A stretch of 64,000 nt of DNA, taken from positions 115,258,001 through 115,322,000 of the forward strand of contig NC_043003.1 of the NCBI RefSeq assembly GCF_006345805.1. Reading direction: 5' to 3'. The notes beneath the pieces are model-generated. The model saw nothing but the letters and a program-made list of their open reading frames with translations. It was not told the origin of the DNA and ran no database searches. The position numbers were made by a program, and so were the translations under genes. This stretch comes from Octopus sinensis. Lineage: Eukaryota. Positions 24,541-63,275 of this stretch are shown in pieces (the first letter of the stretch is position 1; the number at the start of each line of letters is the position of its first letter).

Positions 24541-24573
<33 letters not shown>

Positions 24574-29465: not shown

Positions 29466-29838
29466 GGATCTTTTCGGTTTGAACGGCAGTTTTTTCTAGC
29501 GTTTTTTTTAGGTTTAGGGTTATTTAGGGTTAGGGTTAGGGGTGGGGGAAGGGTATCTTTCTTTCTTCACAAATGTAAATAAACCCAATGTGTTTCTTAA
29601 ACGAGGGACATATTCATACGGCACAGTATGATTTTTACCTCAATAGAGGTCATTGATTGGTAGAAATTACAGAAATTGAAGGAAAAAAACAACAAATATC
29701 TTACAAACTATAGAATTTTCTCAATAAAGCCGAGAGAAAAAGATGTTTTATGAACACATTCTACCAGTATACGAAGTTTAAAATTTTTTAGTTACCTAGA
29801 AATTATGTTAAAAACTGCCGTTCAAACCGAAAAGATTC
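29466..29838. mobile_element. GGATC-TIR MITE copy M1 (internal deletion)
   Basis: 29-bp TIRs and TTAGGG motif; 8-bp flanks AAAGATAA/AAAAATAC (6/8). Confidence 0.9.
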
Positions 29839-36807: not shown

Positions 36808-36844
<37 letters not shown>

Positions 36845-37058
36845 GTGTGTGTATTTGTCGCCCTAGCATTGCTTGACAACCGATGCTGGTGTGTTTATGT
36901 CCCCGTTACTTAGCGGTTCGGCAAAAGAGACCGATAGAATAAGTACTGGGCTTACAAAAGAATAAGTCCCGGGGTCGAGTTGCTCGATTAAAGGCGGTGC
37001 TCCAGCTTGACCGCAGTCAAATGACTGAACCAAGTAAAAGAGTAAAAGAGTAAGAGTA
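36681..37058 (+). mobile_element. SINE family A with a deletion in the head
   Basis: ATAGGCGCAG|TTCCGGGTTCAGTCCCACTGCG... through the (GAGTAAAA)n tail. Confidence 0.9.
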
Positions 37059-37078
37059 TATATATATATATATATATT

Positions 37079-37665: not shown

Positions 37666-37900
37666 ATAAGGCGGTTAGCTGGCAGACATGTAAGCGCGCC
37701 GGGCGAAATGCTTAGCGGTATTTCGTCTGACGTTGCGTTCTGAGTTCAAATTCCGCGAAGGTCGATTTTGCCTTTCCTCCTTTCGGGGTCGATAAATAAA
37801 GTACGAGTTTCGCACTGGGGTCGATGTAATCGACTTAATCCCTTTGTATATCCTTGTTTGTCCCCCGAATGTTTAGCCCCTTGTGAGCAATAAAGAAATA
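37666..37900 (+). mobile_element. SINE family B
   Basis: Reverse complement of the 15353-15586 type. Confidence 0.9.
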
Positions 37901-37953
37901 TATATATATTTACATACACACACACACATACACACACACACACACACACACAT

Positions 37954-40848: not shown

Positions 40849-42070
40849 CTAGCAGAGACACCCGACGTTGCCCGGGAATTAATTTTTCCTTATGTATTGG
40901 AAGAATAATAATAAAAAATAACAATAGTAATATACGAAAATACAAAATTTACCACTTTTATGAAAGGAGATAAATTTTACCACATATGTTGAAGGAGGTT
41001 ATCTTAGAGCTTGTTTTCTGGTTTGGAGCATAGACAAATAAGTATTGCAAATTACCTTCGCTGGAGTAACCAACAAAGTTGACCATGAGAAAATCGAGCA
41101 TGTATATTTCAAAGACTGATCTTGAGCTGTATTAATAGACATTGCAAAGGAATGTAGTACTGGGAATTGTGTTCGTTTGAACTGAAATGGCATGTCTGTT
41201 GGTTTGAGTGTATTTCTTGAAAGGAAAACCTCTTCTCCAGAAATACATCCAGTGATGATAGTGGCTTGTGTCACATTAGGTGATAATGTGTTCACAATCA
41301 ACCTTGTCCCATTGCATAATTTAGGAGGATCTAAATTTCTTAGAACCATTATTGGGACACCCACCTTCAGAAAAAGTTGACGTGGAGGAATTCCATGTGG
41401 CTCAAGAGAATTAAGGAACTCCGCTGAGTAATGCTTTGATTTTCATCACGGACTGAATCAGCTGATTTGTAGTTCTTAATGACTGTTGGAACCTTATTCA
41501 TTAATTCATTGTTAATTCTTGCTACTGTTTCATTTTTTGGATTAAGAATTGCCCTTCCACACAACCATTTATGTGAATTATAATTATTCCTTAACTCTCG
41601 CAATACGCTGTTCTTTAATTGAGCTGGGTAATTTATCATGATAGGAATATGAGCCAAAGTGGTATCGTCACTCCCATCAAGTGGTACTTTACCATTTCCT
41701 AATTGGAGGAGGCAGGTTGAAAACTATTTTGTACATTGGTCCCCATGTAATGAACCTAGCACGTTAGTATTGAAGGAGAATTTCAGTACTTTATTCCATG
41801 GGTGTGAAACCTTAATGCATGTTTTTATTTCATCAGATTTTGTTCGTCTCAGAATGATTGGTAACGTCTGTCTCAAGTCTCCTGATAAAACTAATGTAAC
41901 TCCTCGCATAGATTTATTGTTGCCTCTGATGTCCTGTAAGGTCTTGCCAAGCGCTTACGTTGCACTCCTGTGTGACATTGTGCATTCATCCCAAAAGATA
42001 AGTCGGCATTGGCACAACATTTCTGGTGAACCTGAATCTTCGCTTAAGTCACAAATTAGACTGTCAATCG
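40849..42070 (-). mobile_element. Helitron 3' half: decayed PIF1-type helicase and canonical 3' end
   Basis: IFWDECTM (Walker B), VLSGDLRQTLP, RAILNPKN, PIMVLRNLDPPKLCNGTRL and QFPV..SFAMSIN.AQ.QSL motifs. Terminal hairpin CCCGGGCAACGTCGGG then CTAG-T at 40849 on the minus strand. Confidence 0.93.
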
Positions 42071-43225: not shown

Positions 43226-43668
43226 GGATCTTCTCGGTTTCAACGGCAGTTTTTTAATATAATTTCCACGTAACTAAACACTTTTAAACTTCGTATACTG
43301 GTAAAGTTTGTTTATAAAACTTCTTTTTCTCTTGGCTTTATTGAGAAAATTCTATAGTTTGTAAGATATTTGTTGTTGTTTTTCTTCAATTTCTGCAATT
43401 TCAACCAATCACTGACGTCCACTGAGGTAAAAAATTATTCTGTGCCGTATGAATATGTCCCTCGTTTAAGAAACAGATTGGGTTTATTTAGATTTGTGAA
43501 GAAAAAACGATACCCTTCCCCCACACCTAACCCTAACCCTAACTAATCCTAACTAACCCTAACCCTAAAAAAGATTGAAATGCAATAGATCGATACTAGT
43601 GTCATAATTATGGGTGACAATTTCATATAGCACCGCTAGGAAAAATGCCCTTCAAACCGAAAAGATCC
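43226..43668. mobile_element. GGATC-TIR MITE copy M2
   Basis: Both TIRs present; 8-bp TSD CAATGAGG/CAAAGAGG. Confidence 0.93.
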
Positions 43669-43966
43669 CAAAGAGGTTATGAATGGCTGCATGCGCCCCT
43701 CATCACATGCAGTACCATAAATCTTTTAAACAGTCCGTTTTTATCATGTATTTACATAACAATAAATTATCATGTTACATATCATTGCAAGTATTTGAAC
43801 CGTTATATACATTCTCTACAATTGTTTTCTTTTTCAATATTTTTTTAAAACATAACATAAAACGCCTGGCTCTTTCTTTTTTTCTTCCTTTTTTTTCTCC
43901 TTTTACTTTTTTTCGTTTTTCTTTTCTCTTTTTTTTTCCTGTCAATTTAACATTCTTATTTACTTT

Positions 43967-44540
43967 TTAGTAATATTTCATTAGTGGTTCGATATCTACT
44001 AAATCCACTACTGGTGGCAATTCTTTGAATTCCACCCTTACTCCTGGTGGTTCAATATTATCTCCACACATTTCTTGTAGTCTCTTATAACTTTCTTCTT
44101 CAATCCCTATCGCCTTCATGTCCTCTTCATATATATATATATGCTGGTACCTTTACTCTTTCTATTTGATTGAACTTGAGTATTTCCTTCTCTTTTTCAA
44201 TATTCTTCGAGCATGTAACCTAATACCATACACCATTTCCTCCTTTTATTTTCTTTCCGTTATTTTGACTTTCCTGTTCTCTCTTTTCCTCCTCCACTCT
44301 AAACAGTCTCTCTAATTCTTCTTCGGCCAGCTGAATTTCCGAATCCTTTTCTACCGGAGCAACTGGTATTTATTACTTGTAGCTCCACATTCTTTTTACT
44401 TTCTTTCTCTGTCACCCTTTTGTCTTCCTTCCTGCTGACCTCCTTCGCGGTTTCTTTTCTCATATCTTCTCTCTTCTTTTTCTGTTTCTCTGTGTTCCAA
44501 ATTTAAATCTTGCCGAATTCAGCTTCGTTTCTCATCCCTC
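43967..44540 (-). pseudogene. Decayed charged-residue-rich ORF C-terminus, possibly a LINE ORF1 remnant
   Basis: EIQLAEEELERLFRVEEEKREQ...EEDMKAIGIEEESYKRLQEMCGDNIEPPGVRVEFKELPPVVDLVDIEPLMKYY*, with one stop and one frameshift at a (TA)n. No diagnostic motif recognised. Confidence 0.35.
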
Positions 44541-44831
44541 TTGTGTGGGGAAATGAACGTATTATCAATAGAGTTACCTCTGCGCAGTTGTTTGAGATTA
44601 TGACGAGACGCAATTTGGAGTCTATTTCCGCTCCTGTCGGAAAGTGACGTGAATTCTATATAATCAGCAAGGATTCTAGGAGAATGAAATGCAGTGTGTT
44701 AATGGTGAATTATGAACCACTAGACAATTACAATGAAGATACGTCGAAAAATATTGTGATTATATATCATTCTTCAACGGGAGTATATTTACAATTTCAT
44801 AAACATAAATTTAAATTTTGGTCTAAATACC

Positions 44832-45065
44832 TATTTCTTTACTGCCCACAAGGGGCTACACACAGAGGGGACAAACAAGGACAGACAAACGGATTAAGTC
44901 GATTATATCGACCCCAGTGCGTAACTGGTACTTATTTAATCGACCCCGAAAGGATGGAAGGCAAAGTCGACCTCGGCGGAATTTGAACTCAGAACGTAAC
45001 GGCAGACGAAATACGGCTACTCATTTCGCCGGGCGTGTTTACGTTTCTGCCTGTTCGCCGCCTTA
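44832..45065 (-). mobile_element. SINE family B with a 16-bp TSD (1 mismatch)
   Basis: TTTTGGTCTAAATACC (44816-44831) / TTTTGCTCTAAATACC (45066-45081). Confidence 0.92.
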
Positions 45066-45149
45066 TTTTGCTCTAAATACCGATGTCCCTAATGGCAGCC
45101 CAAACTGGGGCACAAAGGAGAAATAATCACTTTATTCAACACCTTTACT

Positions 45150-45838
45150 TCCTCGCTTACGACGACGAGGCTTCCCGTTTATCTGATCAACGAACAGCCT
45201 ACTCTTGGAATTAACGTGCAAGTGGCCGAGCCTTTCGCAGTCACGCGTATCTTAACGTAGTTCTCAGGGAGACTCGGCGTCACATAGAATGTGACAAGAC
45301 TGGCCTCTGTAAATTTACGTGCGACTCATTTTGGGCAACCGAGTGAACTGCAGTGACAAATCGCAGAGTAGCCGGTATCAAGAGAAACCAGCACTATTTT
45401 AAGTTCAATAAAATCTCTTTCGTGTGTCTTCAACTCTAGATCAATGTATAGTTGGAAGCACTCCGTCGGTTACGACGATGAGGGTTCCGGTTGATCCGAA
45501 TCAACGGAACAGCCTGCTCGTGAAATTAACGTGTAAGTGGCTGAGCACTCCACAGACACGTGTACCCTTAACGTAGTTCTTGGGGATATTCAGCGTGACA
45601 CAGAGAGTGACAAGGCCGGCTCCTTGAAATACAGGTACAACAGAAACAGGAAGTAAGAGTGAGAGAAAGTTGTGGTGAAAGAGTACAGCAGGGATCACCA
45701 CCATCCCCTGCCGCAGCCTCGTGGAGCTTTTAGGTGTTTTCGCTCAATAAACAGTCACAACGCCCGGTCTGGGAATCGAAACCGTGATCCTATGACCGCG
45801 AGTCCGCTGCCCTAACCACTGGACCATTGCGCCTCCAC
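45150..45838 (-). mobile_element. Two adjacent family C SINE copies (45150-45400 partial, 45455-45838 with head)
   Basis: Both share TTACGACGA.GAGG.TTCC..TT.ATC.GA.TCAAC(G)GAACAGCCT.CTC.TG.AATTAACGTG.AAGTGGC.GAGC; the head matches 31800-31856. Confidence 0.8.
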
Positions 45839-46448
45839 TCAATTTATAGTTGACAAAATGGATGACCACAGTCACAGGAAATTGATTATGCATCTCTTTT
45901 CTTGCTACACCTGTAGGGACGAGAAATTCTTCTCTGATATAATGCAGCAACGCTGTAATATTTCTGCAGATGAGTAAGCTTCATAAGCTACCCCCTGGAA
46001 GCAAAACACACCACAATCTATAGCAACAGCCACTAAATCTTAACACTGATGTCAGCCCAGCCTCTAATATTAGCGAAATAGAAAGGGAGCATGAGTCTTA
46101 ACAATGGGTTCAATCATAATTTAGGACATCAACGTTTTGTGCCATCAACTGGGTTTTTGTTTGTGTATTTGGTATTGAATCGTAGGAAAAATAAATGATT
46201 CACACGTTTCATTTGCCAGACTATTAGACGCTTCACCAGTAGAGTTTAATCCTCCATTTCGAAAAATATAAAGATAAAACAAAACAGATAAGAATGAGCT
46301 TGAAATTGTTACACGTATCGAAAAAAATTGTTACAAGTGAGGATATTAATGCGAAATAATCATAACCTAATCATGGAATATATGGATTGCCTTCAAGACG
46401 AAAATTGTGCACAGATTCGTGTAGAAATTGGAATACTCCCGAATCTTG

Positions 46449-46863
46449 GGATCTTTTCGGCTTGAACGGCAGTTTTTTCTAGCGGTGTCATATGAAATTG
46501 TCACCCATAATTATAACCCTACTATCGATCTATTGCATTTAAATCTGTTTTAGGGTTAGGGTTAGTGGTGGGGAAAGGGTTTTTTTTTTCTTCACAAATG
46601 TAAATAAACCCAATCTGTTTCTTAAACGAGGGACATACTCATACGACACAGAATGTTTTTTACCTCAATAGACGTTATTGATTGGTTGAAATTGCAGAAA
46701 TTGAAGAATAAAAACAACAAATATCTTACAAACTATAGAATTTTCTCAATAAAGCCAAGAGAAAAAGATGTTTTATAAACACATTCTACCAGTATACGAA
46801 GTTTAAAATGTTTTAGTTACCTAGAAATTATGTTAAAAATTGCCGTTCAAACCGAAAAGATCC
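46449..46863. mobile_element. GGATC-TIR MITE copy M3
   Basis: Both TIRs present; 8-bp TSD GAATCTTG/GATTCTTG. Confidence 0.95.
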
Positions 46864-47531
46864 GATTCTTGTTCCAGCATTGTATGACACACCCAAAACA
46901 CGAAATAATTTCTAGCGATGGCACCTGGGTTTGTGTCACTGTTATAGTGAGTATCAGTGGTATAGTGGATACTCAGGCACCTGGGTGAGTATCAGTGGTA
47001 TAATCACTTTCCAGAGGAAGAGAGAGGCACTTCTTGGTATAGATAGTGAAAAGGAAGCAACATTTTTGGAAGTATATATGTATGTGTGTGTCTGTCCGCG
47101 CGCGCGCGCGTGTATGTATTTGTAGGTTTATGTTTATATATACGTGTATCCACACGAATATATATTTGTGTATGTATAAATTGGTTCGGAAATGCAATAG
47201 AACAATTTATAAACTAGTAACGTAAGTTTCACACGTAACATTGGTATATGACACAGCTGCAGTAATATGTTGAGCATTTGGTAGAAGAAATTCACTGACT
47301 GCTGTTGGATGAAAATAGAATATCAAATATAGTCTAATGATACAATGACTATTTGAGGAAAAAAGTAAAATTAATTGGGTGGGAAAGGGGGAGGGAGAGA
47401 GCAATTAGACTGATGACTGGCAGAATATGAAATGTTTCAAATTGGCAAAACAAACAAGTGGCATTCAATACAAAACGTAAACTATAATTATAAAGAAAAG
47501 AGAGGGCAAGAGCAGAGGTAAGGGAAATCTT

Positions 47532-47555
47532 GGATCTTTTCGGTTTGAACGGCAG
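47532..47555. mobile_element. Solo TIR of the GGATC MITE (M4)
   Basis: GGATCTTTTCGGTTTGAACGGCAG followed by unrelated sequence. Confidence 0.9.
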
Positions 47556-47802
47556 AAAGCACGTATATCAAACCACCATCCTGATCTGAACTTTAAATTT
47601 CCTGCTTATTGCATTCAACCCCCAATCTGGAGCACATGTTCGATTACCTCAGTTATTTACAGAATTTGACTATCAAATCTACGTATTCTCTATAAATATC
47701 ATTCTAGGAGATTCACCATGTGTCATAATGGTATATATATTTCTTACAACTTCACTCCTTTTTAATGCTTCCTTCTCCAACTGCTCACATTTTAAAGATT
47801 TC

Positions 47803-48215
47803 GGATATTTTCGGTTTGAACGGCAGATTTTTCTGGCGGTGTCATATGAAATTGTCACCCATAATTATGACCCTAGTATAATCTCTTTTAGGGTTAGTTA
47901 GGGTTGGTTAGGGTTAGGGATGGGGGAAGGATATCTGTTTTTCTTCACAAATGTAAATAAACCCAATCTGTTTCTTAAACGAGGGACATATTCATATGGC
48001 ACAGAATGATTTTTAACTCAATAGACGTCACTGATTGGTTGAAATTGCAGAAATTGAAGAAAAACAACAACAAATATCTTACAAACTATAGAATTTTCTC
48101 AATAAAGTCAAGAGAAAAAGATGTTTTATAAACACATTCTACCAGTATACGAAGTTTAAAAATTTTTAGTTACCTAGAAATTATGTTAAAACTGCCGTTC
48201 AAACCGAAAACATCC
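47803..48215. mobile_element. GGATC-TIR MITE copy M5
   Basis: Both TIRs present; no direct TSD, but the left flank AAGATTTC is the reverse complement of the M4 left flank. Confidence 0.93.
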
Positions 48216-48475
48216 GCAATCTGTAATATTTGTTATAACAAATATTATTAATTTACAGATGATATTTGTTCCGATTCCTACTCTTTAGCAAGAACTCTTG
48301 CACATTTACTCGAGTAAATTCTTTTTTATGTTTGTCATATTCAAACATAAAATACATTTTGGTGTTTTGTTATCTATACTTTAATGGAGAAATCTACTTA
48401 TCGATTAATTCTAATCATGCCAAAAGATTATCAAAGGTTAGTCTGCCTGGAATCTTTTTTATAAATTTCAGATTT

Positions 48476-48907
48476 GGATCTTTTCGGTTTGAACGGCAGT
48501 TTTTAACATAATTCCTAGGTAACTAAAAAATGTTAAACTGCGTATACTGGTAGAATGTGTTTATAAAACATCTTTTCTCTTGGCGTTATTGAGAAAATTC
48601 TATAGTTTGTAAGATATTTGTTGTTGTTTTTTCTTCAATTTCTGCAATTTCAACCAATCACTGACGTCTAGTGAGGTAAAAAACATCCTGTGCCGTATGA
48701 GTATGTGCCTCGTTTAAGAAACAGATTGGGTTTATTTACATTTGTGAAGAAAAAAGATACTCTTCCCCCCACCCCTAACCCTAACCCTAACTAACCCTAA
48801 CGCTAAAACAGATTGAAATGCAATAGATCGATACTAGGGTCATAATTATGGGTGACAATTTCATATGACACCGCTAGAAAAAACTGCCGTTCAAACCGAA
48901 AAGATCC
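48476..48907. mobile_element. GGATC-TIR MITE copy M6 (opposite orientation to M5)
   Basis: Both TIRs present; no 8-bp TSD (TCAGATTT/AATGTCTT). Confidence 0.95.
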
Positions 48908-49138
48908 AATGTCTTTTATCAAAATGCAGTTTTGGAGCTTCGTTAGAGTTGCGTATTTCAGGGACATGCTTCCATCATAAATCTTATTCACTATGACATT
49001 TGAATTTACTGCGGGCTTTATTTAACGTATGTATACATTTGTGAAACTATAAATGTTGCCCAAATGTTTCCAAAGTTACTTTCTCCAGAATATAAGTTTA
49101 AATACATCAGCAGCAAAATTATACTGATTCCAGTGTCT

Positions 49139-49528
49139 GGATCTTTCCAGTTTGAACGGCAGTTTTTTCTAGCGGTGTCATATGAAATTGTCACCCATAA
49201 CTATGACCCTAGTATCGATCTATTCCATTTAAATCTATTTTAGAGTTAGGGTTAGTTAGAGTTACTGTTAGTTGTGGGGGAAAGGTATCTCCATTTTTTT
49301 TCAGAAATGTAAATAAACGCAATCTGTTTCTGAAACGAGGGATATTTTCATACGGCACAGAATGTTTTCCCCTCAATAGACGGTCATTGATTGGTTGAAA
49401 TTGCAGAAATTGAAGAAAACAAACAACAAATATCTTACAAACCATAGAATTTTCTCAATACGAAGTTTACATTTTTGTTAGCTACCTAGAAATTATGTTA
49501 AAAACTGCCGTTCAAACCGAAAAGATGC
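49139..49528. mobile_element. GGATC-TIR MITE copy M7 between 231-bp direct duplicates
   Basis: Both TIRs present; 48908-49138 is repeated at 49529-49759. Confidence 0.93.
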
Positions 49529-50221
49529 AATGTCTATTATCAAAATGCAGTTTTGGAGCTTCGTTATAGTTGCGTATTTCAAGGACATGCTTCCATCACA
49601 AATCTTATTCACTATGACATTTGAATTTACTGCGGGCTTTATTTAACGTCTGTATACATTTGTGAAACTATAAATGTTGCCCAAATGTTTCCAAAGTTAC
49701 TTTCTCCAAAATATAAGTTTAAATACATCAGCAGCAAAATTATGTTGAATCCAGTGTCGTTTCATATTTGCTGGGTGTTGTTGAAGAAATAGAAATCTGA
49801 ATAAGACAAATGGTTTTAGTTTACATACGACAACTGTGAATGACTACAAACACACACCCCATCACCCACTGATTATGTTTCCTGATAACTTTCAAGAAAA
49901 TGGATACTTTTAAAGAAATTTTCTACGAATATCTTTCAGATGGCATAGATTGCGATTATATCGGAATTTAATGTTTAAAAATGATGGAGAGGATGACAGT
50001 TTACACATCTCTACTTTATTTTCGTCCTACATTTTCATAATATCATTACAAGTGAATGTTGAAAAATATGACTTTTGAGAAATATTGCACTCTTTGCCGA
50101 AAATGTTCTGAAATAAATCTGTGTGGAAAGGGAAGTACAAAGCTAACAGGAATTATATTTTCGCAACCCTAATCACTGTTTTTTTAAATAGAATCTAGGA
50201 TGGTCTGTTCCCTGCGTGACA

Positions 50222-50314
50222 CCTTGGTTGAGCAGGTGGCTTCTTCTATAGCCTCGCTCCGACCAAAGCCTTGTGAGTAGATATGGTAGATGGAAACTGA
50301 AAGAACCCGTCGTA

Positions 50315-50408
<94 letters not shown>

Positions 50409-50610
50409 TGTGTCTGTGTTTGTCCCCCCCACTATTGCTTGATAACCAATGCTGGTGTGTTTATGTCCCCTGTAACCTAGCAGTTCGGCAAAATAGAACG
50501 ATGGAATAAGTTCTAGGCTTACAGAAATAAGTCCTGGGTTCGATTTGTTCGACTGAAAGGCGGTACTCCAGAATGGCTGCAGTCAAATGACTGAAACAAA
50601 TAAAATAATA
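50222..50610 (+). mobile_element. SINE family A, 5'-truncated
   Basis: CCGACCAAAGCCTTGTGAGT..GACGGAAACTGAAAGAA..GTCAAATGACTGAAAC. Confidence 0.85.
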
Positions 50611-50833
50611 ACATAACTGTCAGTAAAACCTCAACAAAATGGGGAAACAAAATTGAGGCATATAAATTAACCATCACGGTCTATTTTCCACATGGGATTC
50701 CTATGAAATCGTAATCTGAATCGCAATATAATCGTAATCTAGACAGTCTGAAATGTATTTGTAGAAACTCACCTTAATAAATATACATTTTTCAGGAAGA
50801 TGTGAGGAAATTAAATCAAATGGGTACAGTTGT

Positions 50834-51242
50834 GGAATGTTTTCGGTTTGAACGGCAGTTTTTGACATAATTTCTAGGTAACTAAAGAATTTTAAACTTC
50901 GTATACCGGTAGAATGTGTTTATAAAACATTTTTTTCTCTTGACTTTATTGAGAAAATTCTATAGTTTGTAAGATATTTGTTGTTTCTTTCTTCAATTTC
51001 TGCAATTTCAACCAATCAAATACGTCTATTGAGGTAAAAATCATTCTGTGTCGTATAAATATGTCCCTCGTTTAAGAAACAGATTACGTTTATTTACATT
51101 TGTGAAGAAAAAAAGATACTCTTCCCCCCACCCTAACCCTATAACAGATTGAACTGCAATAGATCGATACTAGGGTCATAATTATGGGTGACAATTTCAT
51201 ATGACACCGCTAGAAAATCTGCCGTTCAAACCGAAAAGATCC
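50834..51242. mobile_element. GGATC-TIR MITE copy M8
   Basis: Left TIR slightly degenerate, right TIR intact; the right flank is an inverted copy of 43669-44117. Confidence 0.92.
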
Positions 51243-51696
51243 GAAGGCGATAGTGACTGAAGAGGAAAGTTATAAGAGACTGAATGAAACGTGTGGAGAT
51301 AATATTGACCCACCAGGAGTAAGGGTGGAAGTCAAAGAATTGCCACCAGAAGTGGATTTAGTAGATATCGAACCACTAATGAAATATTACTAAAAAGTAA
51401 ATAAGTATGTTAAATTGACAGGAAAAAAAGAGAAAAGAAAAACGAAAAAAGAAAAAAAGAAAAAGGAGAAAAAAAGGAAGAAAAAAAAGAAAGAGCCAGG
51501 CGTTTTATGTTATGTTTTTAAAAAATATTGAAAAAGAGAACAATTGTAGATATTGTATATAACGGTTCAAATACTTACAATGGTATGTAACAGGATAATT
51601 ATTTTTTTATGTAAATACATGATAAAACGGACTGTTTAAAATATTAATGGTACTGCATGTGATGAGAGGCGCATGCAGCCATCCATAACCTCATTG

Positions 51697-51755
51697 GGAT
51701 ATTTTTAGTTACCTAGAAGTTATGTTAAAAACTGCCGTTCAAACCGAAAAGATCT
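51697..51755. mobile_element. Internally deleted GGATC MITE (M9)
   Basis: GGATATTTTT fused to AGTTACCTAGAAGTTATGTTAAAAACTGCCGTTCAAACCGAAAAGATC. Confidence 0.85.
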
Positions 51756-51934
51756 TTAATTTTAATGAGGGAGTGATTACCATTACCCGTATTGCGAGTT
51801 CAAAGTAAAGTCAGACATAATATATAAGAAAAACTACACAAATTACGATCCATATGTATAAATATCATTTCGCAACCAAAGGAAAACGGCCCGGGGGTGG
51901 TCCTCCTGCTGGTATTTAGTAATGTAGTTTTCAT

Positions 51935-52099
51935 ATAGGCGCAGGAGTGGCTGTGTGGTAAGTAGCTTGTTTACCAACCACATGGTTCCGGGTTCAGTCC
52001 CACTGCGTGGCATCTTCGGCAAGTGTCTTCTACTATAACCTCAGGCCGACCAAAGCCTTGTGAATGGATTCGATAGACGGAAACTGAAAGAAGCCTGTC

Positions 52100-52134
<35 letters not shown>

Positions 52135-52246
52135 TGTGTGTTTGTGTGTCTTTGTTCGTCCCCCTAGCATTGCTTGACAACCGATGCTGATTAAAGGCGG
52201 TGCTCCAGCATGGCCGCAGTCAAATGACTGAAACGAGTAAAAGAAT
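51935..52246 (+). mobile_element. SINE family A with intact head and an internal deletion
   Basis: ATAGGCGCAGGAGTGGCTGTGTGGTAAGTAGCTTG..GGTTCCGGGTTCAGTCCC. Confidence 0.92.
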
Positions 52247-54107
52247 AACACAAATGAAATTAGTTCAGGTATGAGAAACTTCTATAAAAACAACGTCGAT
52301 TCTCTCCATATTGAAGAATCGTCGTTATAGAGTGAGTTATAAAAGGATAACTAATAGGTTGCCACACTTACCCAAATATATTAAGCCTCTGTACTAGACT
52401 AATTTGAATATTGTCTGACACTATGACTGGCTCTAGTGCTGGAGGTTTCTTCAGCCTCATATTGTTGTTCACTTGTTTGGTATTACTTACAATAATTACT
52501 ATATCAAATCAGAAATGTTTAACATCACAAAGAAATTAATTGTTGGATACATTATGTTTGGAAAAGTAGTTGAGTTCCGTTTTGTTGTTGTGGTATATAT
52601 CTGTTTTCAAAGAACTTAAATCATGCAATTCAAAGAACTGATTCTGCTTTATATTTTATATGACCTGTTTATTTAGACCAATAACCGAATAAATTTTGGG
52701 ATTTATATTATTTTTAACACAATGAAAAATATCCCGTAATACACGCGGAATATTTACCTTTGGCAAGATCTGTTACTATCTTATCTACAAGTTGGGAAGG
52801 CATGGCAGCAGAAATCACTGAAAACAGATCCAAACGAGTTCCAATTGCTTCAACCGAATTACCAAAATGAAGGAGATAGAAATTGTAAAACTACATATCG
52901 CTTTATAAATATTTAGCTTCTTTTCTGTGGAATAGGCAAGAATATAGTTTAATTATGCTTGTTCCTTCTTTTTGTTATTCTTCGCATTAATCTCGTTGGA
53001 GCGGGAATTTCCATTGTTCTTTTGATTTCTTTCACTTTCTTTATATGTGTCTGCTATCCATCATTCTTTGTCTCCCTCTGACTATTTCCAAATTTAATAT
53101 ACCCCGCTACCATTTCTTTGATTTTATCTTCCTTTGTTCTCACTCAGACATCATTTACCAATTCTCTTGACATCATTCCGTTAATTTTTATCTCAAATGC
53201 TTTCATATATTTTTATTTTACATTTTTCTTCTTTTCCTTTTCCATTTTCTTTTATACGACTATCTCTTTAGTTTTCTAATTTCAACCATTAGTCATTTAT
53301 AGTGTATTTGAAAGATTTCCTGTTATCTTTTGCTAAAAAAGTATAAATCTAATTAATCCACGCCTCCGCCCAAAACAGTCTCTTACAGCAACATATGCGA
53401 GATTGATTATTTATTATAAATTGGCCGATAGAATGTAATATATAGCTTTAAAAATGTTTCTCATTAGAAATCAAAAGAAGCAAACGAAATGATCAGAACG
53501 AAAACTATAGTCTTGAGATTCTACTACTAAAACGGTTTCTTAATTGGCTGTCCACTTCGCTCTTTATTTATTTATATTTTTGTTTGCTTTATAATTGTTT
53601 TAGCTACTACAGTCTGTATACGATTGCCTTCTAAGAGAAATGTATTTTATTGTACAAATATCTTACATATGATTCTTTGGTAGAGATAAATGTCTAAACA
53701 TACGGTAAGCGTGTTCAGCCTCGTCTTATATTAAAGATTTGATTCCATCCTCCTCTTTGATAAAAATGTAACTTAATGAAAATGTATATAGACATAAAAG
53801 TAGTGTTGTTGTCTTTGACTAACCCAAAATCGACTTTCACTGTGGAGACTCTTAGAACCTAAGAAATTGCTTGAACAAATAGGTGAGACCAAATTACCGA
53901 TGTACCTTCTCTTCTGTTGAAGTGTCATTGCAGTCTGTCTATGATTATCTTGATCATTTACCGTTAAAAGGATATTCAATATTACATTACCCAGTATTGC
54001 ACTTTTTAATATGGCTGACTGTGATATAAAGGAACAGTTGAACCAGTGCACAGCGCCCCTTTTGTTTGTAACCGGTTCAGTATATTAAGCGCAAACATGA
54101 TATATAT

Positions 54108-54163
<56 letters not shown>

Positions 54164-55337
54164 CTCAAAATGTTAGGATTACTTTATAAATTGTAGTTAG
54201 CAGAATAATTAATTGCAATAACTGCCTAGTCATTGAACATAGTAAAGTAAAAATGAAAATCAAATATGTATTATTCGAATATCCGTTTCATGAATGCATT
54301 CATCATACACGAAGGTGGTGTTGGGGCAGAATCTACCCACAATCTCAACGTAATCAACATTCATTTAACTGAGGAATCTATACAATAAAGAATGCGGAAA
54401 ATTCATGGGGGGGCTACACCTCATGTCGATCAGTCTTTGTCCCTATTTGTCAGAATGAACTGGATTCTGCTGTGAAAAGAACATACATTAAACAAACACC
54501 ACTTCTATCCATTCATGGTCCAAGGACTCATTACTTAGCGGGACGCTGGAAAAACTAGCAATCTTCCCTCTGCAATTTCGTTTTAATCTTATCCTTCCAT
54601 AATCAGAAAATTAGTACAAATCACTCTCAAATATATCTGGAGCTCTACACGACATGCGCACTGTAGAAGAAAAGATCTTTAGCTGTTCTATGTTTAAATT
54701 ATCAATACATCCATTATTACAATAAATTATAAACTTCGAAACGTTATAATATTTATATTCTATAATAATTCAGTTGTAAACTGTGAACAAAATGCGAAAT
54801 GTCAATTCTGATTAAAAAACTAAGTCTTACCATAAGAAATTCCTTCACAAAACTAAATTGCGCTCGCAATAAAGAATTCAAAGTATATTGTGAACCATGT
54901 AATTCAAAGAATGCTTTTCAAGGTTAGATACTTTAAAGAACAAAAATTCCAATTCTTTTGTATCTGCACACTAAACAACAAAAATCAAAGAATACCATCT
55001 AAAGTAGACCAAATGCTTCAACTATCATCCGAGTAAACAGTTCTTGACCTTAAAAAAATTATCTCTTTTATAACCACATATCCACAAGAAAGGTACGCGT
55101 AGATAGTTGATCACATATAGGCAGATTTTAGAAGCGAAACGGCTGTAATACGTTGATATATATATATATATGGCGATAAGTGACAATGAAGCATAACAAA
55201 TTACAGCTATAGGAAATCAACACGAGATTTTAGCTTACATATAACAAATATACAAGATGTGGGGGCGGAAAAATTTCAAGACGAAACAAAATTGCTTTCA
55301 CTACAGAAAATTCTTCATTTACCAATGCTAATTATAG

Positions 55338-55735
55338 TTTTTACTTTATTCTTTTACTACTTTCGGTCATTAGAATGAATCGAGCCCAGTTCTTACAGTC
55401 TTGGTAATTATTCTGTTGGTTACTTATGCCGAACCACTACGCTATGGTGACGTAACCAAGCCAACACCGGTTTTCAAGCGGTGGAGGGCGACAAGCAGTC
55501 ACAAAAATAAGTGCGCACACACACACACACACTCACACGCACACATGCACACACACACACATACACGCACACATGCACACACACACACAAAACACATGTC
55601 TACAAAATCCACTCACAAGACATTCGTTGAACCGAAGATATAGCTGGGGACCCCTGGCAAAGGTGTCACGCTGTGGGACTGAACCGGGATCCCCCCAGTC
55701 GTGAAGCAAATTTCTTTCGACACAGCCACATATAT
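55338..55735 (-). mobile_element. Degenerate SINE, family A
   Basis: GCCGAACCACTACGCTATGG..AAATCCACTCACAAG..GGGACTGAACC..CACAGCCAC. Confidence 0.7.
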
Positions 55736-56003
55736 TCACATTTTCTTTCTTTCAAATATATTCAGAATATTCTTCACGACAAAGAATACTTCATGAAAAA
55801 TCATTTGCCGCAATTACTTTACAATATATAAGCCATTAAAAATGTGTCGTCAATTTAGAAAATGGAGATGTAGAATTAATAAAATTTATTATCTGCAAAA
55901 ATACAACATATTCTCTTATAGCTGTTTCAATTTAGGTTAAAATAATAAATTACAATAATTTAATCATTATATTAAACAAAATTTCGTCAGAGAGGTAAAA
56001 ATA

Positions 56004-56418
56004 GGATCTTTTCGGTTTGAACGGCAGTTTTTAACATAATTTCTAGGTAACTAAAAAATTTTAAACTTCGTATACTCGTAGAATGTGTTTATAAAACATA
56101 TTTTTCTCTTGGCTTTATTGAGAAAATTCTATAGTTTGTAAGATATTTGTTGTTTTTTTTTTCAATTTCTGCAATTTCAACCGATCAATGACCTTTATTG
56201 AGGTAAAAATCATTCTGTGTCATATGAATATGTCCCTCGTTTAAGAAACAGATTAAGTTTATTTACATTTGTGAAGAAAGAAAGATACCCTTACCCCCAC
56301 CCCTAACCCTAACCCTAAAAGAGATTGAAATGCAATAGATCGATTCTAGGGTCATAATTATGGGTGACAATTTCATATGACACCGCTAGAAAAACTGCCG
56401 TTCAAACTGAAAACATCC
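56004..56418. mobile_element. GGATC-TIR MITE copy M10 between 64-bp direct duplicates
   Basis: Both TIRs present; 55940-56003 is repeated at 56419-56482. Confidence 0.95.
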
Positions 56419-56958
56419 AAATATTAAATTACAATAATTAAATCATTATATTAAACAAAATTTCATGAGAGAAGTAAAAATATATACCGTTAGGTTATTA
56501 GGTGTTGTGTTTTCAAATCATCTTAGAGGACTGAATATTATTTTGTTGCTAATATTGGTATAAACTTGGGCCAGAGTGTCATAGGTTGTTTTATTATTTA
56601 ATGGAGAATGTGCATATAATCAGTGTAATAATTGGTAAATATAAAAATACAGGTTAGATAGTGAGTTACAGTAAATAAGAGTATCATATGAAAGAAAGAT
56701 TAGATAAATGAACACTTTTGAAATTTGTTTATAAAATTGAGGGAAATTAACGTGAAAAATAGATAAAAAATATATGTTTACGCTGGTAAAAAAACTACTA
56801 GGCAACAAATCAATAACTCACCTTATGTTTAGTATATATGTAAATATATATAAAATTACTTCATCCGTGTAATAAGGTTCAACAAAAAGAATACTCCATC
56901 TGCTAAGAGTAAACACATTGTGAATTGATAGTATAAAACAATATATATATATATATAT

Positions 56959-57042
<84 letters not shown>

Positions 57043-57123
57043 TGAAGTTGAGAATGTATTGGGATTTGCTAAGGCTTTCTATTTTTAAATATTTAAAGAC
57101 AACCTGCCTCGTAAATTTCTCTG

Positions 57124-57540
57124 GGATCTTTTCGGTTTGAACGGCAGTTTTTTTCTAGAAGTGTCATATGAAATTGTCACCCATAATTATGACCCTAGTA
57201 TCGATCTATTGCATTTCAATCTCTTTCAGAGTTAGGGTTAGTTAGGGTTAGGGTTAGGGGTGTGGTAAGGGTATATTTTTTCTTCACAAATGTAAATAAA
57301 CCCAGTCTGTTTCTTAAACGAGGGACATATTTATACGGCACTCAATAGACGTCAGTGATTGGTTGAAATTGCAGAAATTGAAGAAAAAAAACAACAAATA
57401 TCTTACAAACTATAGACTTTTCTCAATAAAGCCAAGAAAGAAAGATGTTTTATAAACACATTCTACCAGTATACGAAGTTTAAAATTTTTTAGTTACCTA
57501 GAAATTATGTTAAAAACTGCCGTTCAAACCGAAAAGATCC
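57124..57540. mobile_element. GGATC-TIR MITE copy M11
   Basis: Both TIRs perfect; 8-bp TSD TTTCTCTG/TCTCTCTG. Confidence 0.95.
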
Positions 57541-58938: not shown

Positions 58939-60336
58939 TTTATTCATTTATTTGTGAATAGTTTAGGATACAGAAGGCAAAAGGCAAAAGGGAAAAAAAA
59001 CAGACAAGAAACATCATTGATCCAAAATTCATTTTACTGTCTTTCTTCATATTTTCTTATTGAACTTCAAACAAATAATATTTTACCCGAAGAAACACGA
59101 TCTATATTATTTAAGTTACCGCGGATGAGAAGAACTTCAAGCGTTCTATATAATCTCCATGTAAGACAAGTCCCACCCACTCGACTACATTTACAACTCT
59201 CTTACTACAAGCAGAGTCATATCCATGACGGAACCTGGCTTCACCCATTAACATTGATTCTTCTTTGTTCAATGCCAGCGTTCTGAGTGAAGGAATGTTT
59301 GGGGAGGATAATCAAAGAAAAACGAACAATCATTGGTTTTCCTTTCAACTATGAGATTCGTTACTTTATATTACAAATGTTTATTCGGTAGTGTGCGCAA
59401 CTTAGTAAACGCAAACAAACGTTGCCATTGTGTTTGCCAATGATTTTTCCATGCCAATTTAAGATGTGATCGATGCGATAGCTTCAAATGACTTTCAGTC
59501 TTTACATAGATGTAATCATGTCTACAAACTCACACCACACACACACACACACACCACACACACACACACACTGATATGCGTACGCAGAGACACATGCCTC
59601 CAATCGTGCGAAAATACACAAGAACGTAAATACATCGATATATATGTATGTATACACATATATAAACACAGTGAAAGACATCCACATATATATGAATATA
59701 TAAATATGCCCACAAATATATGTATGAGGACATACGTCTGTACATATATAAGAGAGCTGGACAAGTTCAATTCCTGATGAATACGGAAGAAAATCTCATC
59801 ATATTTTACTGAGTTTTACAATAATTGAGGAGATTCAAGGTGCATTTACACGTATATGTTCAGGGGTCCTCTCACTTATGCTGTTAGGGTCAGAAGTTGG
59901 AAGCCCCTTACTATATTATATTGTCATTGCTGTTTCTACGCTATAGATTTTGGCTCTTAATATTGAAATACTTTCATAATATTTTAATCTTTAATAACAA
60001 ACATGGATATAAATTGGGAAAATCAATTACAGCTGTTTCAGCCAAGAGGTAAAAATACCTCATTCTACCTTTATTACGCAAGTGGAATTTTACAGGAGGA
60101 ATTTTAGTTTGTATTTATGGGTTTCTTACAGAATTACAAGAATCCGTATTCGAAATAAAGAATAGGCAGCGATTACCTTCCACCTGAACACAGAACGATA
60201 GAGAAAGTCGTGTCATGTTTCCCGAAGAGACTTAAACAATATTTACCGTATTTGAGGCATGGGGCTTCCGAAGCGCTTAAGAGTATTCAACATTTAACCT
60301 GATATTGAGTGGAAAACGTTTACTAAAATTCTATAC

Positions 60337-60554
60337 TATTTTACTCTTTTACTCGTTTCAGTCATTTGACTGCGGCCATGCTGGAGCACCGCCTTTAGTC
60401 GAGCAAATCGACCCCGTAACTTATTCTTTGTAAGCCCAGTACTTATTCTATCGATCTCTTTTGCCGAACCGCTAAGTGACGGGGACATAAACACACCAGC
60501 ATCGGTTGTCAAGCAATGCTAGGGAGACAAACACAGACACACAAACACACACAC

Positions 60555-60598
<44 letters not shown>

Positions 60599-60699
60599 GA
60601 CAGGCTTCTTTCAGTTTCCGCCTACCAAATCCACTCACAAGGCATTGGTCGGCCCGGGGCTATAGCAGAAGTCACTTGCCCAAGATGCCACGCAGTGGG
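60337..60699 (-). mobile_element. SINE family A, head truncated
   Basis: Aligns with 21717-22100. Confidence 0.92.
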
Positions 60700-61860: not shown

Positions 61861-62193
61861 CTCTTACTCTCTTTTACTCTTTTATTTGTTTCAGTCATTT
61901 GACTGTGGCCATGCTGAAGCACCGCCTTCAGTCGAGCAAATCGGCACCAGGACTTATTCTTTGTAAGCCCAGTACTTATTCTATCGGTCTCTTTTTTTGC
62001 CGAACCGCTAAGTTACGGGAACGTAAACACACCAGCATCGGTTGTCAAACAATGTTGGGGGACAACACACACACACACACACACGTATATATATACATAT
62101 ATACGACGGGCTTCTTTCAGTTTCCGTCTTCCAAATCCACTCACAAGGCTTCGGTCGGCCCGAGGCTATAGTAGACACTTGCCCAAGGTGCCA
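61861..62193 (-). mobile_element. SINE family A, head truncated
   Basis: Aligns with other family A copies. Confidence 0.92.
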
Positions 62194-62463
62194 TACTAAT
62201 TATATTCTTTATTCTATATTATATCTATTGTGAATAATAGAGCGCATCTAATATTAATAATATCAGTAATAACTGCATATTGTATATGCTTATAAATGTA
62301 AATATGTATGTATATTTCAGTATATATATTGGTATTTATGTATGTATATATATATATATGTATATGTATATGTATATGTATATCTATCTTTATATCTATC
62401 TATCTATCTATATATATATATTTATATATATATATATATATATATATGGTGTGTGTGTGTATG

Positions 62464-62494
<31 letters not shown>

Positions 62495-63275
62495 TTATCT
62501 ATATATAAGTATTCAAATGTCTGTGTATTTTATTTATTTTATATTTATATTTATTTGTAACTTAACATTATGTACTCTATAATCTCCAACGAAGCGTAGA
62601 GATATACCCAAGTACCTCATTTTCATCTACCTATTACTTCACTCCACTTGAGTAATAAAGGTAGAATGAGGTATTTTTACCTCTTCGCTGAAACAGCTGT
62701 AAGTGATTTCCCAATTTATATCCATGTTTGTTATTTTATAATAATTACCGGTAGCCTTATATATTACTATATTTTATGTTTTATATGTAAAACATATGTT
62801 ACCTGTATGTATATTATTGTAATTATCAGTTTAGTAAATAAATAAATAAGTTAACATAATATAATGTCTAAAAGTTGATGAACCACCTAATGATCCTCTC
62901 CATTGTCTTATTGCTATATAAATTAATGGTAAAATATCTCCTTACCTTCACCCGTTTAGTATAATACATAATGTAATTGCAATGCTATAAATAACACTTC
63001 TGTATTAATAATTGTATATTCTATCAGCAGTATATTGGATAGATATTATCCCTTAGTGGGTTGGATTCACAACCTCTAACTTTCTTGGAGTTATATATAT
63101 ATATATATATATGCATGTATATACAAACTTTTATTCTTCTACATGCTTCAGTCCTAAGGGTGTGCCATACAGGGACACTGCCAGTGAAAAATAACAAATG
63201 TTATAATCGGGAGTCGAACTTTGATCGATGGTTAGGAAGACAACCATGATATATATATATTATATATATATTATA

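What the first reader, a model, noticed from the sequence alone, without database searches (positions are those of the whole stretch)
43226..57540. A locally hopping TIR element that sits at the breakpoints of duplications and inversions
Seen: 10 of the 11 copies or fragments of one ~415-bp MITE (29-bp TIR GGATCTTTTCGGTTTGAACGGCAGTTTTT) lie in 14 kb, and none in the first 29 kb. Three of these have clean 8-bp TSDs (M2, M3, M11; 7/8 each). The other seven lack one, and six of them are flush with a rearranged flank (64-bp and 231-bp direct duplications, ~450-bp inverted duplication, inverted 8-bp target); M6 abuts the start of the 231-bp duplicate. Established: P-element hybrid-element insertion and Ac/Ds reversed-ends or sister-chromatid transposition produce flush adjacent duplications, deletions and inversions. 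Inference: this family does so at unusually high frequency and acts as a local genome-scrambling engine. 5'-GG termini with 8-bp TSDs are compatible with Merlin/IS1595-like transposases, but no autonomous element is present here.
Basis: partly seen in the sequence, partly recalled or inferred. Interest (0 to 1): 0.85.

Follow-up and report, generated by a model that had tools for sequence, protein, structure and literature searches.

The report
Clustered octopus MITEs with terminus-flush rearrangements
A small non-coding DNA transposon is packed about 50 times more densely than usual into 14 kb of an octopus-like genome, and where copies sit close together the neighbouring DNA was duplicated or inverted exactly at the transposon tips, a fossil example of a known process, aberrant transposition between linked elements.

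Summary
One ~415-432 bp MITE family (29-bp TIR starting GG, 8-bp TSD) has 11 copies or fragments in the window, 10 of them in 43226-57540. Three low-copy duplications and one inverted 8/8 target site have breakpoints at MITE termini.

- M9 is an internally deleted resident copy, not a fragment of M2's duplicate.
- The ~450-bp inverted duplicate X' looks like repair-synthesis filler copied from M2's flank.
- The inverted 8-bp target is shared by M4 and M5 (8/8). M5's own inverted flanks are not above chance.

The host is an Octopus-like cephalopod. In 190 kb of O. sinensis DNA the family has only 2 copies, one with a perfect TSD. All isolated copies with both flanks visible keep TSDs. All TSD-less copies lie in the 47.5-56.5 kb core.

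Best explanation (about 0.6): transposase cut the termini of tightly linked copies, and the breaks were resolved by aberrant reinsertion, end joining or ectopic repair synthesis. This is what is known for Ac/Ds, P elements and mPing.

The "unusually frequent scrambling engine" claim is not shown. Merlin membership fits the TIR and TSD, but no transposase was found. Verdict: new member of a known kind, interest about 0.35.

The parts
29466..29838 (+). M1, the only copy outside the cluster. It carries a ~60-bp internal deletion and a 6/8 TSD (AAAGATAA/AAAAATAC).
43226..43668 (-). M2, an ordinary insertion with a 7/8 TSD (CAATGAGG/CAAAGAGG). Its 5' flank is the template for X'.
43669..44117 (+). 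X, the 449-bp 5' flank of M2. This is the original copy and runs on into unduplicated sequence at 44118.
46449..46863 (+). M3, an ordinary insertion with a 7/8 TSD (GAATCTTG/GATTCTTG).
47524..47555 (+). The target copy GAAATCTT (47524-47531) followed by M4, a solo 24-bp TIR (47532-47555).
47556..47802 (.). A 247-bp spacer that ends in AAGATTTC (47795-47802), the exact reverse complement of M4's flank. It is inferred to be an inverted segment.
   Evidence: 8/8 match, 0.04 expected
47803..48215 (+). M5, a full copy with no direct TSD. Its 5' terminus shares the inverted target with M4.
48476..48907 (-). M6, a full copy with no TSD. Its 5' terminus is flush with the start of D.
48908..49138 (+). 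D, a 231-bp copy lying between the 5' termini of M6 and M7, which face each other head to head.
49139..49528 (+). M7, the most diverged copy (7.3% from consensus, with a 45-bp deletion) and no TSD. It is bracketed by D and D'.
49529..49758 (+). D', the 3' flank of M7. It is 96% identical to D and continues without a second MITE into 49759 onwards.
50835..51242 (-). M8, a full copy with no TSD. Its 5' terminus is joined bluntly, with no microhomology, to the distal end of X'.
51243..51696 (-). X', an inverted copy of X (29/447 substitutions, 5 indels). It includes M2's target copy CCTCATTG at 51689-51696.
51697..51755 (+). M9, an internally deleted MITE (GGAT / AT microhomology / last ~55 nt). 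Its 3' part shares none of M2's 8 private changes.
55940..56003 (+). d64, the left copy of the 64-bp direct duplication. It ends flush at M10.
56004..56418 (-). M10, a full copy with no 8-bp TSD. It is bracketed by the 64-bp duplication in TSD-like geometry.
56419..56482 (+). d64', the right copy of the duplication (59/64 identical). It starts flush at M10.
57124..57540 (+). M11, an ordinary insertion with perfect TIRs and a 7/8 TSD (TTTCTCTG/TCTCTCTG).

Best explanation
Overall claim. A burst of a non-autonomous TIR transposon (Merlin-like by TIR and TSD) left an unusually dense local cluster, either by local reinsertion or by a regional insertion preference. Once copies lay a few hundred bp apart in mixed orientations, the family's transposase cut termini belonging to different copies. 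The resulting breaks were resolved aberrantly. Four events explain all seven TSD-less copies.

1. M8 and a resident M9 lay head to head. Their inner (5') termini were cleaved and the DNA between them, including the inner TSD copies, was lost. The M9 end invaded the homologous M2 7 kb away and copied 449 nt of M2's flank (X'). The new end was then blunt-joined to M8's terminus. M9 later lost its interior by abortive gap repair.

2. M6 and M7 were also head to head and went through the same kind of event. M6's cleaved end paired with M7's identical 3' TIR and copied 230 nt of M7's flank (D), which was joined to M7's 5' terminus. Alternatively, M7 reinserted by a hybrid-element (sister-chromatid) hop, which gives the same D-M7-D' product.

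3. M10 is bracketed by a 64-bp duplication. This is explained by a sister-chromatid hybrid-element hop or by integration into widely staggered nicks.

4. A ~660-bp inversion has one breakpoint at M5's terminus. It left a 24-bp TIR stub (M4) and an inverted copy of the 8-bp target.

Shown: the structures, the base-exact breakpoints, and M9's independence from M2.
Inferred: transposase involvement, the order of events and the repair pathways.
For: - Breakpoints are flush with termini. 8 of the 12 ends of the three duplications are within 1-2 bp of a MITE terminus, while the other five low-copy duplications in the window are 0.6-24 kb from any terminus.
- No homology or microhomology exists at M8|X' or at either junction of M10.
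- M4 and M5 share an 8/8 inverted target site.
- No third MITE or remnant follows D' or precedes d64.
- M9's 3' part shares none of M2's 8 private changes (P=5e-4 if it were M2's copy), so X' was attached to a different MITE through MITE homology.
- Duplicate divergence (4.3-7.8%) is comparable with copy age (2.8-7.3% from consensus; star-like tree).
- Isolated copies (M1, M2, M3, M11, L006) all keep TSDs. All TSD-less copies are within 47.5-56.5 kb, where spacers are 230-260 bp.
- Background density is about 1 copy per 80 kb against 10 per 14.3 kb in the cluster.
- Established knowledge: linked Ac/Ds pairs give duplications, deletions and inversions with breakpoints at termini (PMC3744419, PMC3239180). 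Tightly linked mPing MITEs give structural variants at their termini (PMC7584900). Excision breaks are repaired with fillers from a few bp to several kb, starting within 3 bp of TE ends (PMC5023962).
Against: - No transposase gene, and no evidence of activity, is available for this family.
- Only one cross-element TSD (M4/M5) was found. The other events have no TSD partner, so strand transfer itself is not demonstrated.
- No footprint of an old donor site is seen at the outer edge of d64 or of D.
- The filler model needs invasion on only 29 bp of TIR homology for D.
- The hybrid-element model needs M7's donor site to abut M6.
- There is no outgroup or orthologous locus to polarise any event.
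- The window's species was not pinned down.
Confidence: 0.6

Rival explanations
1. Transposase-independent, repeat-driven rearrangement. The 29-bp TIRs and the inverted MITE pairs (hairpin or cruciform formers) cause replication template switching or unequal exchange. For example, exchange between M7's 3' TIR and M6's 5' TIR, which are direct 29-bp repeats, would give D-M7-D'. This needs either a partner chromosome that lacked M7 or a later precise loss of a second M7 by slippage between its TSDs.
For: - The D/D' homology runs through the 29-bp TIR (259 bp aligned), so that boundary need not lie at the terminus.
- The D'|R junction (CAGTGTC-G) looks like an unduplicated empty site.
- X' is attached to M9 through MITE homology, not by a cut.
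- 11% of the rice Ds-pair rearrangements were plain homologous recombination (PMC3239180).
Against: - M8|X' distal, d64|M10 and M10|d64' are base-exact at intact termini with no homology or microhomology.
- No MITE remnant lies left of d64 or right of D'.
- NAHR predicts three same-orientation copies or chimeric elements, and these are not seen.
- 29 bp is short for homologous exchange.
- This route needs extra precise-loss steps.
Confidence: 0.2
2. Assembly artefact for the two tandem cases. For D/D', a haplotype switch through the shared 29-bp TIR would give hap1 L-M6-D-M7 followed by hap2 D'-R, where hap2 lacks M7. For d64, a false tandem duplication would arise at a heterozygous MITE insertion.
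For: - The path M7 3' TIR -> M6 5' TIR -> D' -> R reproduces the observed order exactly and leaves an empty-site-like D'|R junction.
- False duplications at heterozygous indels are a known assembly error (own knowledge).
Against: - The copies differ by 4.3% and 7.8%, which is far above what I would expect for allelic divergence in octopus (own knowledge, not tested).
- No homology exists at the M10 junctions to mislead an assembler.
- The window contains no N.
- X/X' is inverted and 7 kb apart, and the M4/M5 inversion cannot arise this way.
Confidence: 0.12
3. Ordinary independent insertions into a preferred target region. On this view the missing TSDs come from decay, and the flank identities reflect insertion into pre-existing repeats.
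For: Flanks of several copies share an AATCT-like motif, which hints at a target preference.
Against: - At about 4% divergence per lineage an 8-bp TSD should still match at least 6/8. The core copies match only 1-5/8.
- D, X and d64 are two-copy sequences, not repeat families.
- A MITE landing exactly at the junction of a pre-existing two-unit tandem, without a TSD, twice over, is very unlikely.
Confidence: 0.04

Closest known systems
Aberrant transposition at tightly linked mPing MITEs in rice (PMC7584900)
   Same: - A MITE burst produces linked copies.
- Structural variants have breakpoints at one or both MITE termini, some with filler DNA.
- Linked copies are the unstable ones.
   Different: - mPing is PIF/Harbinger (3-bp TSD) and does not hop locally. 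Here the TSD is 8 bp and the copies are about 50-fold clustered.
- The rice events were caught de novo and were mostly deletions. These are old, fixed duplications and an inversion in an animal genome.
Ac/Ds alternative transposition (RET, SCT, SLCT) and the small tandem duplications next to maize dhAT elements (PMC3744419, PMC3239180)
   Same: - Each duplicated segment starts precisely at a transposon terminus.
- There are exactly two copies.
- The sizes (116-1262 bp in maize) are comparable to 64-449 bp here.
- An 8-bp TSD is shared by termini of two elements (M4/M5).
- Reversed (facing) termini are the substrate.
   Different: - RET duplications carry two same-orientation sister copies of the element, equally diverged as the flank. 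M6 and M7 are in opposite orientation and 9.4% apart.
- No matching TSDs are seen for three of the four events.
- X' is explained better by repair synthesis than by strand transfer.
P-element hybrid element insertion (Gray et al. 1996 and Preston et al. 1996, as cited in PMC3744419; I could not read the originals)
   Same: The predicted product L-Ra-P-Ra-Rb (the element sitting between two direct copies of its own flank) has exactly the geometry of D-M7-D' and d64-M10-d64'.
   Different: - No donor-site footprint is seen at the outer edge of the duplication.
- The superfamily is different.
- There is no genetic evidence.
Filler DNA and SDSA repair at DNA-transposon excision sites (PMC5023962)
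   Same: - The filler begins within 0-1 bp of a TE end.
- The filler is copied from elsewhere.
- The filler is combined with loss of the adjacent sequence.
- Flanks can carry excess substitutions.
   Different: Here the template is the flank of another copy of the same MITE, reached through MITE homology, so the filler mimics that copy's insertion junction.
Merlin superfamily / IS1595-like elements (PMC8101967)
   Same: - The TIR starts 5'-GG.
- The TIR length (29 bp) lies within 24-462 bp.
- The TSD is 8 bp.
   Different: - No DDE_Tnp_IS1595 transposase or autonomous partner was found.
- MULE-type elements with 8-10 bp TSDs are not excluded (own knowledge).

Membership tests
MITE (non-autonomous TIR element) | Short (<~800 bp), with terminal inverted repeats, a TSD, multiple copies and no coding capacity. 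| tested here: met
   - The consensus is 432 bp with a 29-bp TIR.
- There are 11 copies in the window and 2 in O. sinensis samples.
- All six frames contain stops, and the longest stop-free stretch is under 45 aa.
- The pseudo-ORF has no protein homologue.

Merlin superfamily | TIRs of 24-462 bp that begin with 5'-GG. | tested here: met
   The TIR is GGATCTTTTCGGTTTGAACGGCAGTTTTT, 29 bp. The criterion is taken from PMC8101967.
Merlin superfamily | An 8- or 9-bp target site duplication. | tested here: met
   The 8-bp TSDs match 7/8 in M2, M3 and M11, 6/8 in M1, and 8/8 in the O. sinensis copy L006.
Merlin superfamily | An autonomous partner with the same TIRs that encodes a DDE_Tnp_IS1595 transposase. 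| not testable with these tools
   - None of the ORFs of >=70 aa tested in or near the cluster has a transposase domain. The only transposase and helicase hits are a mariner fragment and PIF1/Helitron fragments outside the cluster.
- No whole-genome search was possible.
- The TIR has 0 hits in the three public collections available.
Reversed-ends-transposition tandem direct duplication (Ac/Ds type) | Exactly two repeat copies, each initiated precisely by the transposon. | tested here: met
   M6|D and M7|D' are both flush, and D occurs twice only.
Reversed-ends-transposition tandem direct duplication (Ac/Ds type) | The two initiating elements are same-orientation sister copies, as similar to each other as the duplicated flanks. 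The first has a full TSD and the second keeps one of the same TSDs. | tested here: not met
   - M6 is (-) and M7 is (+).
- They differ by 9.4%, against 4.3% for D/D'.
- Neither has a TSD.

Alternative transposition in general (two-element strand transfer) | An 8-bp TSD shared between termini of different elements at the new junctions. | tested here: inconclusive
   - It is met once: M4/M5 match 8/8 in inverted form, with 0.04 expected.
- No partner was found for M6, M7, M8, M9 or M10.
- Reciprocal products are not observable.
Hybrid element insertion flanking duplication (P type) | The element lies between two direct copies of its own flank. | tested here: met
   D-M7-D' (231 bp) and d64-M10-d64' (64 bp) are flush on both sides.
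Hybrid element insertion flanking duplication (P type) | The old donor site (paired TSDs or a footprint) sits at the outer boundary of one copy. | tested here: not met
   - TTAGGTTA|AAATAATA at 55939/55940 shows no repeat.
- D's outer boundary is M6's terminus.
. A seamless microhomology repair would erase the mark, so this is weak evidence.
Excision-site filler (SDSA) repair | Foreign sequence replaces the DNA next to a TE, starts within 3 bp of the TE end, and has a template identifiable elsewhere. | tested here: met
   - X' lies between the M8 and M9 termini, with its template at M2's flank.
- M9 is not derived from M2.
. The criterion is taken from PMC5023962.
NAHR between repeats | Breakpoints lie inside the repeats, giving chimeric copies, and a duplication is bounded by three same-orientation copies. 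| tested here: not met
   No third copy or remnant was found, the orientations are opposite, and the termini are intact.

The most novel reading that the evidence does not exclude
The family's transposase is intrinsically prone to local reinsertion and to uncoupled or sister-chromatid end integration. Under that reading it would routinely generate long TSD-like tandem duplications (tens to hundreds of bp) and flank transductions wherever copies accumulate. That would make it a systematic, family-specific source of small structural variation in cephalopod genomes rather than a one-locus accident.
Probability: 0.1. Interest if true: 0.6.

Novelty: new member of a known kind. Interest (0 to 1): 0.35.

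Why it matters
If the reading is right, this locus is a well-preserved natural record, in an animal, of what linked DNA transposons do to their surroundings. Four base-exact events lie within 9 kb. One of them is a flank copied from one MITE onto another, which shows repair synthesis rather than strand transfer.

It supports extending the mPing and Ac/Ds result (linked elements seed structural variation) to a Merlin-like family in a cephalopod. It also gives concrete junction signatures that could be searched for genome-wide.

It does not open a new mechanism.

Tried and rejected
1. Searching for more copies in public collections. The exact 24-mer TIR and a two-TIR gapped pattern gave 0 hits in metagenome, viral and prokaryote-genome contigs.

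2. Retrieving copies through spurious ORFs. The MITE pseudo-peptide was too short in its first form, and the extended form had no homologue.

3. Similarity of M5's and M6's flanks to D, noticed by eye. It is not above the shuffled or positional null, so I rejected it.

4. M5's own inverted flanks (13/17). The per-pair P is 0.003, but 210 pairs were tested and a second pair scored equally, so I rejected it as evidence.

5. A TIR remnant left of d64. None was found by profile search at E<=10.

6. Composite (macro)transposon readings of M8-X'-M9, M6-D-M7 and M5-M6. The outer flanks show no TSD.

7. SCT between M2 and M8 as the origin of X'. This predicts the TSD TCGCCTTC next to M9 and a large duplication of 44118-50834. 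Neither is present.

8. Inversion by crossover between M2 and M9. This would move X rather than duplicate it, and would put a2 rather than X's distal end next to M8.

9. A six-frame Pfam scan of the whole cluster. Only ORFs of >=70 aa were scanned.

10. Reading the original P-element HEI paper. It is not held in the library.

Full report
OBSERVATION

The 29-bp TIR occurs 19 times within 3 mismatches, with 0 expected. BLASTN with M11 and an nhmmer profile built from the nine full copies agree on exactly 11 copies or fragments. One lies at 29466 and ten lie in 43226-57540. No further remnant appears at E<=10.

Ten of 11 points within 14.3 kb of a 64-kb window has a scan-statistic p of 8e-5. The p is 1e-3 to 4e-3 if possibly dependent copies are dropped. 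Two SINE-like families in the same window are dispersed.

M2, M3 and M11 have 7/8 TSDs, where the positional null gives P(>=7/8)=0.0014. M1 has 6/8.

Self-BLAST finds eight low-copy duplications in the window. Eight of their twelve ends lie within 1-2 bp of a MITE terminus. The other five duplications are 0.6-24 kb from any terminus.

WHAT THE ELEMENT IS

- The consensus is 432 bp with stops in all frames.
- It has 29-bp TIRs beginning GG and an 8-bp TSD.
- It contains an internal, length-variable (TTAGGG)n-like tract.
- Copies are 2.8-7.3% from the consensus with roughly additive, star-like pairwise distances. The remote copy M1 is not an outgroup. This pattern indicates one burst rather than serial local duplication. 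Apart from the three duplications, the flanks are unrelated.
- No Rfam or tRNA features are present.
- The window is eukaryotic. It holds a mariner transposase remnant and PIF1/Helitron remnants. The closest protein relatives of the Helitron fragment are Octopus sinensis and O. bimaculoides proteins at 67-81% identity.
- In 189.7 kb of O. sinensis DNA fetched around those genes the family occurs twice. One is a full copy with a perfect 8/8 TSD (AAGGTTTC) and one is cut by the locus end. It does not occur in 20 kb of O. bimaculoides.
- Background density is therefore roughly 1 per 80 kb against 1 per 1.4 kb in the cluster. The caveats are that the sample is small, that it is biased towards Helitron neighbourhoods, and that the window's exact species is unverified.
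- 5'-GG, a TIR within 24-462 bp and 8-9-bp TSDs are the published hallmarks of Merlin (PMC8101967). No transposase was seen, so membership stays untested on its defining protein.

JUNCTION-BY-JUNCTION ANATOMY

(a) X'

- On the + strand the locus reads b1 | M8(-) | X' | M9(+) | b2.
- X' is the reverse complement of M2's 5' flank 43669-44117 (29/447 substitutions, 5 indels).
- Its proximal end, including M2's target copy CCTCATTG, abuts GGAT of M9.
- Its distal end abuts M8's intact 5' terminus with no microhomology. At the donor locus the sequence simply continues.
- M9 is GGAT, then an AT microhomology, then the last ~55 nt. This is the classic shape of abortive gap repair.
- M2 carries 8 private changes in the homologous 57 columns and M9 shares none. 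If M9 had been copied from M2 together with X', 1.8 changes would be expected (P=5e-4).
- So M9 is a different, resident copy, and X' was attached to it through MITE-MITE homology.
- I derived the strand-transfer alternatives and rejected them. SCT between M2 and M8 predicts a TSD and a large duplication that are absent. A crossover between M2 and M9 would move X rather than copy it.

(b) D/D'

- The order is M6(-) | D | M7(+) | D' | R.
- D (231 bp) lies between the two 5' termini, which face each other head to head.
- D' is M7's 3' flank and continues into R without any MITE.
- D and D' differ at 10/231 positions. M6 and M7 differ by 9.4% and are in opposite orientation.

(c) The 64-bp pair

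- The two copies bracket M10 flush on both sides and are 59/64 identical.
- There is no MITE remnant to the left and no homology at either junction.

(d) M4 and M5

- M4 is a 24-bp solo TIR preceded by GAAATCTT.
- M5's 5' terminus, 247 bp away and facing the same way, is preceded by the exact reverse complement AAGATTTC.
- This is an 8/8 match, with 0.04 such matches expected among all 210 terminus pairs.
- It is the signature of two termini that once shared one target site, followed by inversion of about 660 bp with a breakpoint at the terminus.

MECHANISM

All seven TSD-less copies lie in 47.5-56.5 kb, where spacers are 230-260 bp. Every isolated copy with both flanks visible keeps its TSD.

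The most economical account needs four events, each starting with a break exactly at a MITE tip.

- Events (a) and (b) share one architecture. There is a head-to-head pair whose inner flanks, and hence inner TSDs, are gone. In their place sits a filler that starts exactly like the flank of another MITE terminus and ends at an arbitrary base joined bluntly to the facing terminus.
- This is what reversed-ends cleavage (PMC3744419) followed by SDSA and end joining would give. Fillers beginning within 3 bp of TE ends are documented at excision sites (PMC5023962).
- D-M7-D' and d64-M10-d64' also have the geometry I derived for a sister-chromatid hybrid-element hop (L-Ra-P-Ra-Rb). For M10 this, or integration into widely staggered nicks, is the only simple fit.
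- The inversion in (d) fits a staggered break at M5's TIR, or reversed-ends inversion.
- Duplicate divergences (4-8%) match the burst age. Error-prone repair could inflate them, however (PMC5023962).

Shown: the structures, the base-exact breakpoints, M9's independence from M2, and the restriction of rearrangements to linked copies.
Inferred: transposase cleavage and the repair routes.

RIVALS

- TIR- or hairpin-driven template switching or unequal exchange can reproduce D-M7-D', because the homology runs through the TIR and D'|R looks like an empty site. It cannot explain the homology-free, base-exact junctions at M8 and M10, and it predicts extra copies that are absent.
- A haplotype-switch misassembly through the TIR could also fake D-M7-D'. 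Against this, the 4-8% divergence, the lack of any homology at M10 and the absence of Ns argue otherwise. It also cannot explain X' or the M4/M5 inversion.
- Independent ordinary insertions are excluded by the TSD statistics.

COMPARISON AND NOVELTY

Linked Ac/Ds pairs produce deletions, duplications and inversions at very high rates (107 of ~300 rice regenerants, PMC3239180). Maize hAT relatives have left 116-1262-bp duplications that start at their termini (PMC3744419). Tightly linked mPing MITEs generate structural variants with breakpoints at their termini and with filler DNA (PMC7584900).

The present locus is a new, old and unusually dense example in an octopus-like genome and in a Merlin-like family. 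Its one instructive twist is flank transduction between copies by repair synthesis.

The canonical RET duplication structure is not met, so I do not file D/D' under it. The claim of an unusually frequent 'scrambling engine' is not supported by the little external data I could get. Verdict: new member of a known kind, interest about 0.35.

Noticed in passing
window, inside every full MITE copy (e.g. 57225-57260 in M11; alignment columns ~100-150 of A1): The MITE carries an internal telomere-like (TTAGGG)n / TTAGTTAGGG tract whose length varies from about 2 to 7 units between copies. It is an interstitial telomeric repeat spread by a transposon.
   Followed up: partly
window 30988-31475 (-): A mariner-type transposase remnant (Pfam Transposase_1, E=3.8e-6), unrelated to the MITE family.
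   Followed up: partly
window 41002-41954 (-): A Helitron-like PIF1 helicase remnant (Pif1_2B_dom E=1e-17, PIF1 E=6e-11). Its closest relatives are Octopus sinensis and O. bimaculoides proteins (67-81% identity), which points to the host.
   Followed up: yes
window 8933-9313, 21693-22161, 24335-24745, 26986-27401, 36690-37061, 50212-50615, 51935-52248, 60329-60699, 61869-62196: A ~380-bp SINE-like family with an internal microsatellite is dispersed over the whole window and is also present in the O. sinensis loci (81-90% identity). It served as a dispersed control.
   Followed up: partly
window 15352-15586, 23074-23306, 28768-29000, 37666-37908, 44832-45066 (partial copies at 1208-1366 and 12068-12212): A second ~235-bp repeat family (84-92% identity between copies), also dispersed.
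   Followed up: no
window 17891-18708; also 10103-10228, 345-540 and 11409-11704: Large imperfect palindromes (self reverse-complement matches: 858 bp at 78% and 126 bp at 95%), possibly foldback-type elements.
   Followed up: no
window 4982-5165 vs 7868-8051; 59993-60086 vs 62643-62735: Two other young low-copy duplications (96% identity, one direct and one inverted) that are not associated with any copy of this MITE.
   Followed up: no
window 48224-48247: A perfect ~20-24-bp AT-rich palindrome (ATATTTGTTATAACAAATAT) lies 8 bp outside M5's 3' terminus, in the 260-bp spacer between the tail-to-tail copies M5 and M6.
   Followed up: no
window 45453-45838 vs L002 22774-23158; window 31726-31855 vs 45645-45820: Another repeat in the GC-richer stretch at 45.4-45.9 kb is 97% identical to a copy in O. 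sinensis, which suggests a young family. A partial copy lies at 31.7 kb.
   Followed up: no
window, flanks of M3, M4, M5 and M6 (e.g. 46442-46448, 47525-47531, 48216-48224, 48467-48475): Several flanks contain an AATCT/AGATT motif that resembles the TIR's own start (GGATCTTTT). This may reflect a target-site preference, but it is not statistically established.
   Followed up: partly
window 51756-51771: Eight bp beyond M9's 3' end lies AATGAGG, the reverse complement of the CCTCATT target copy on M9's other side. I treated it as chance.
   Followed up: no
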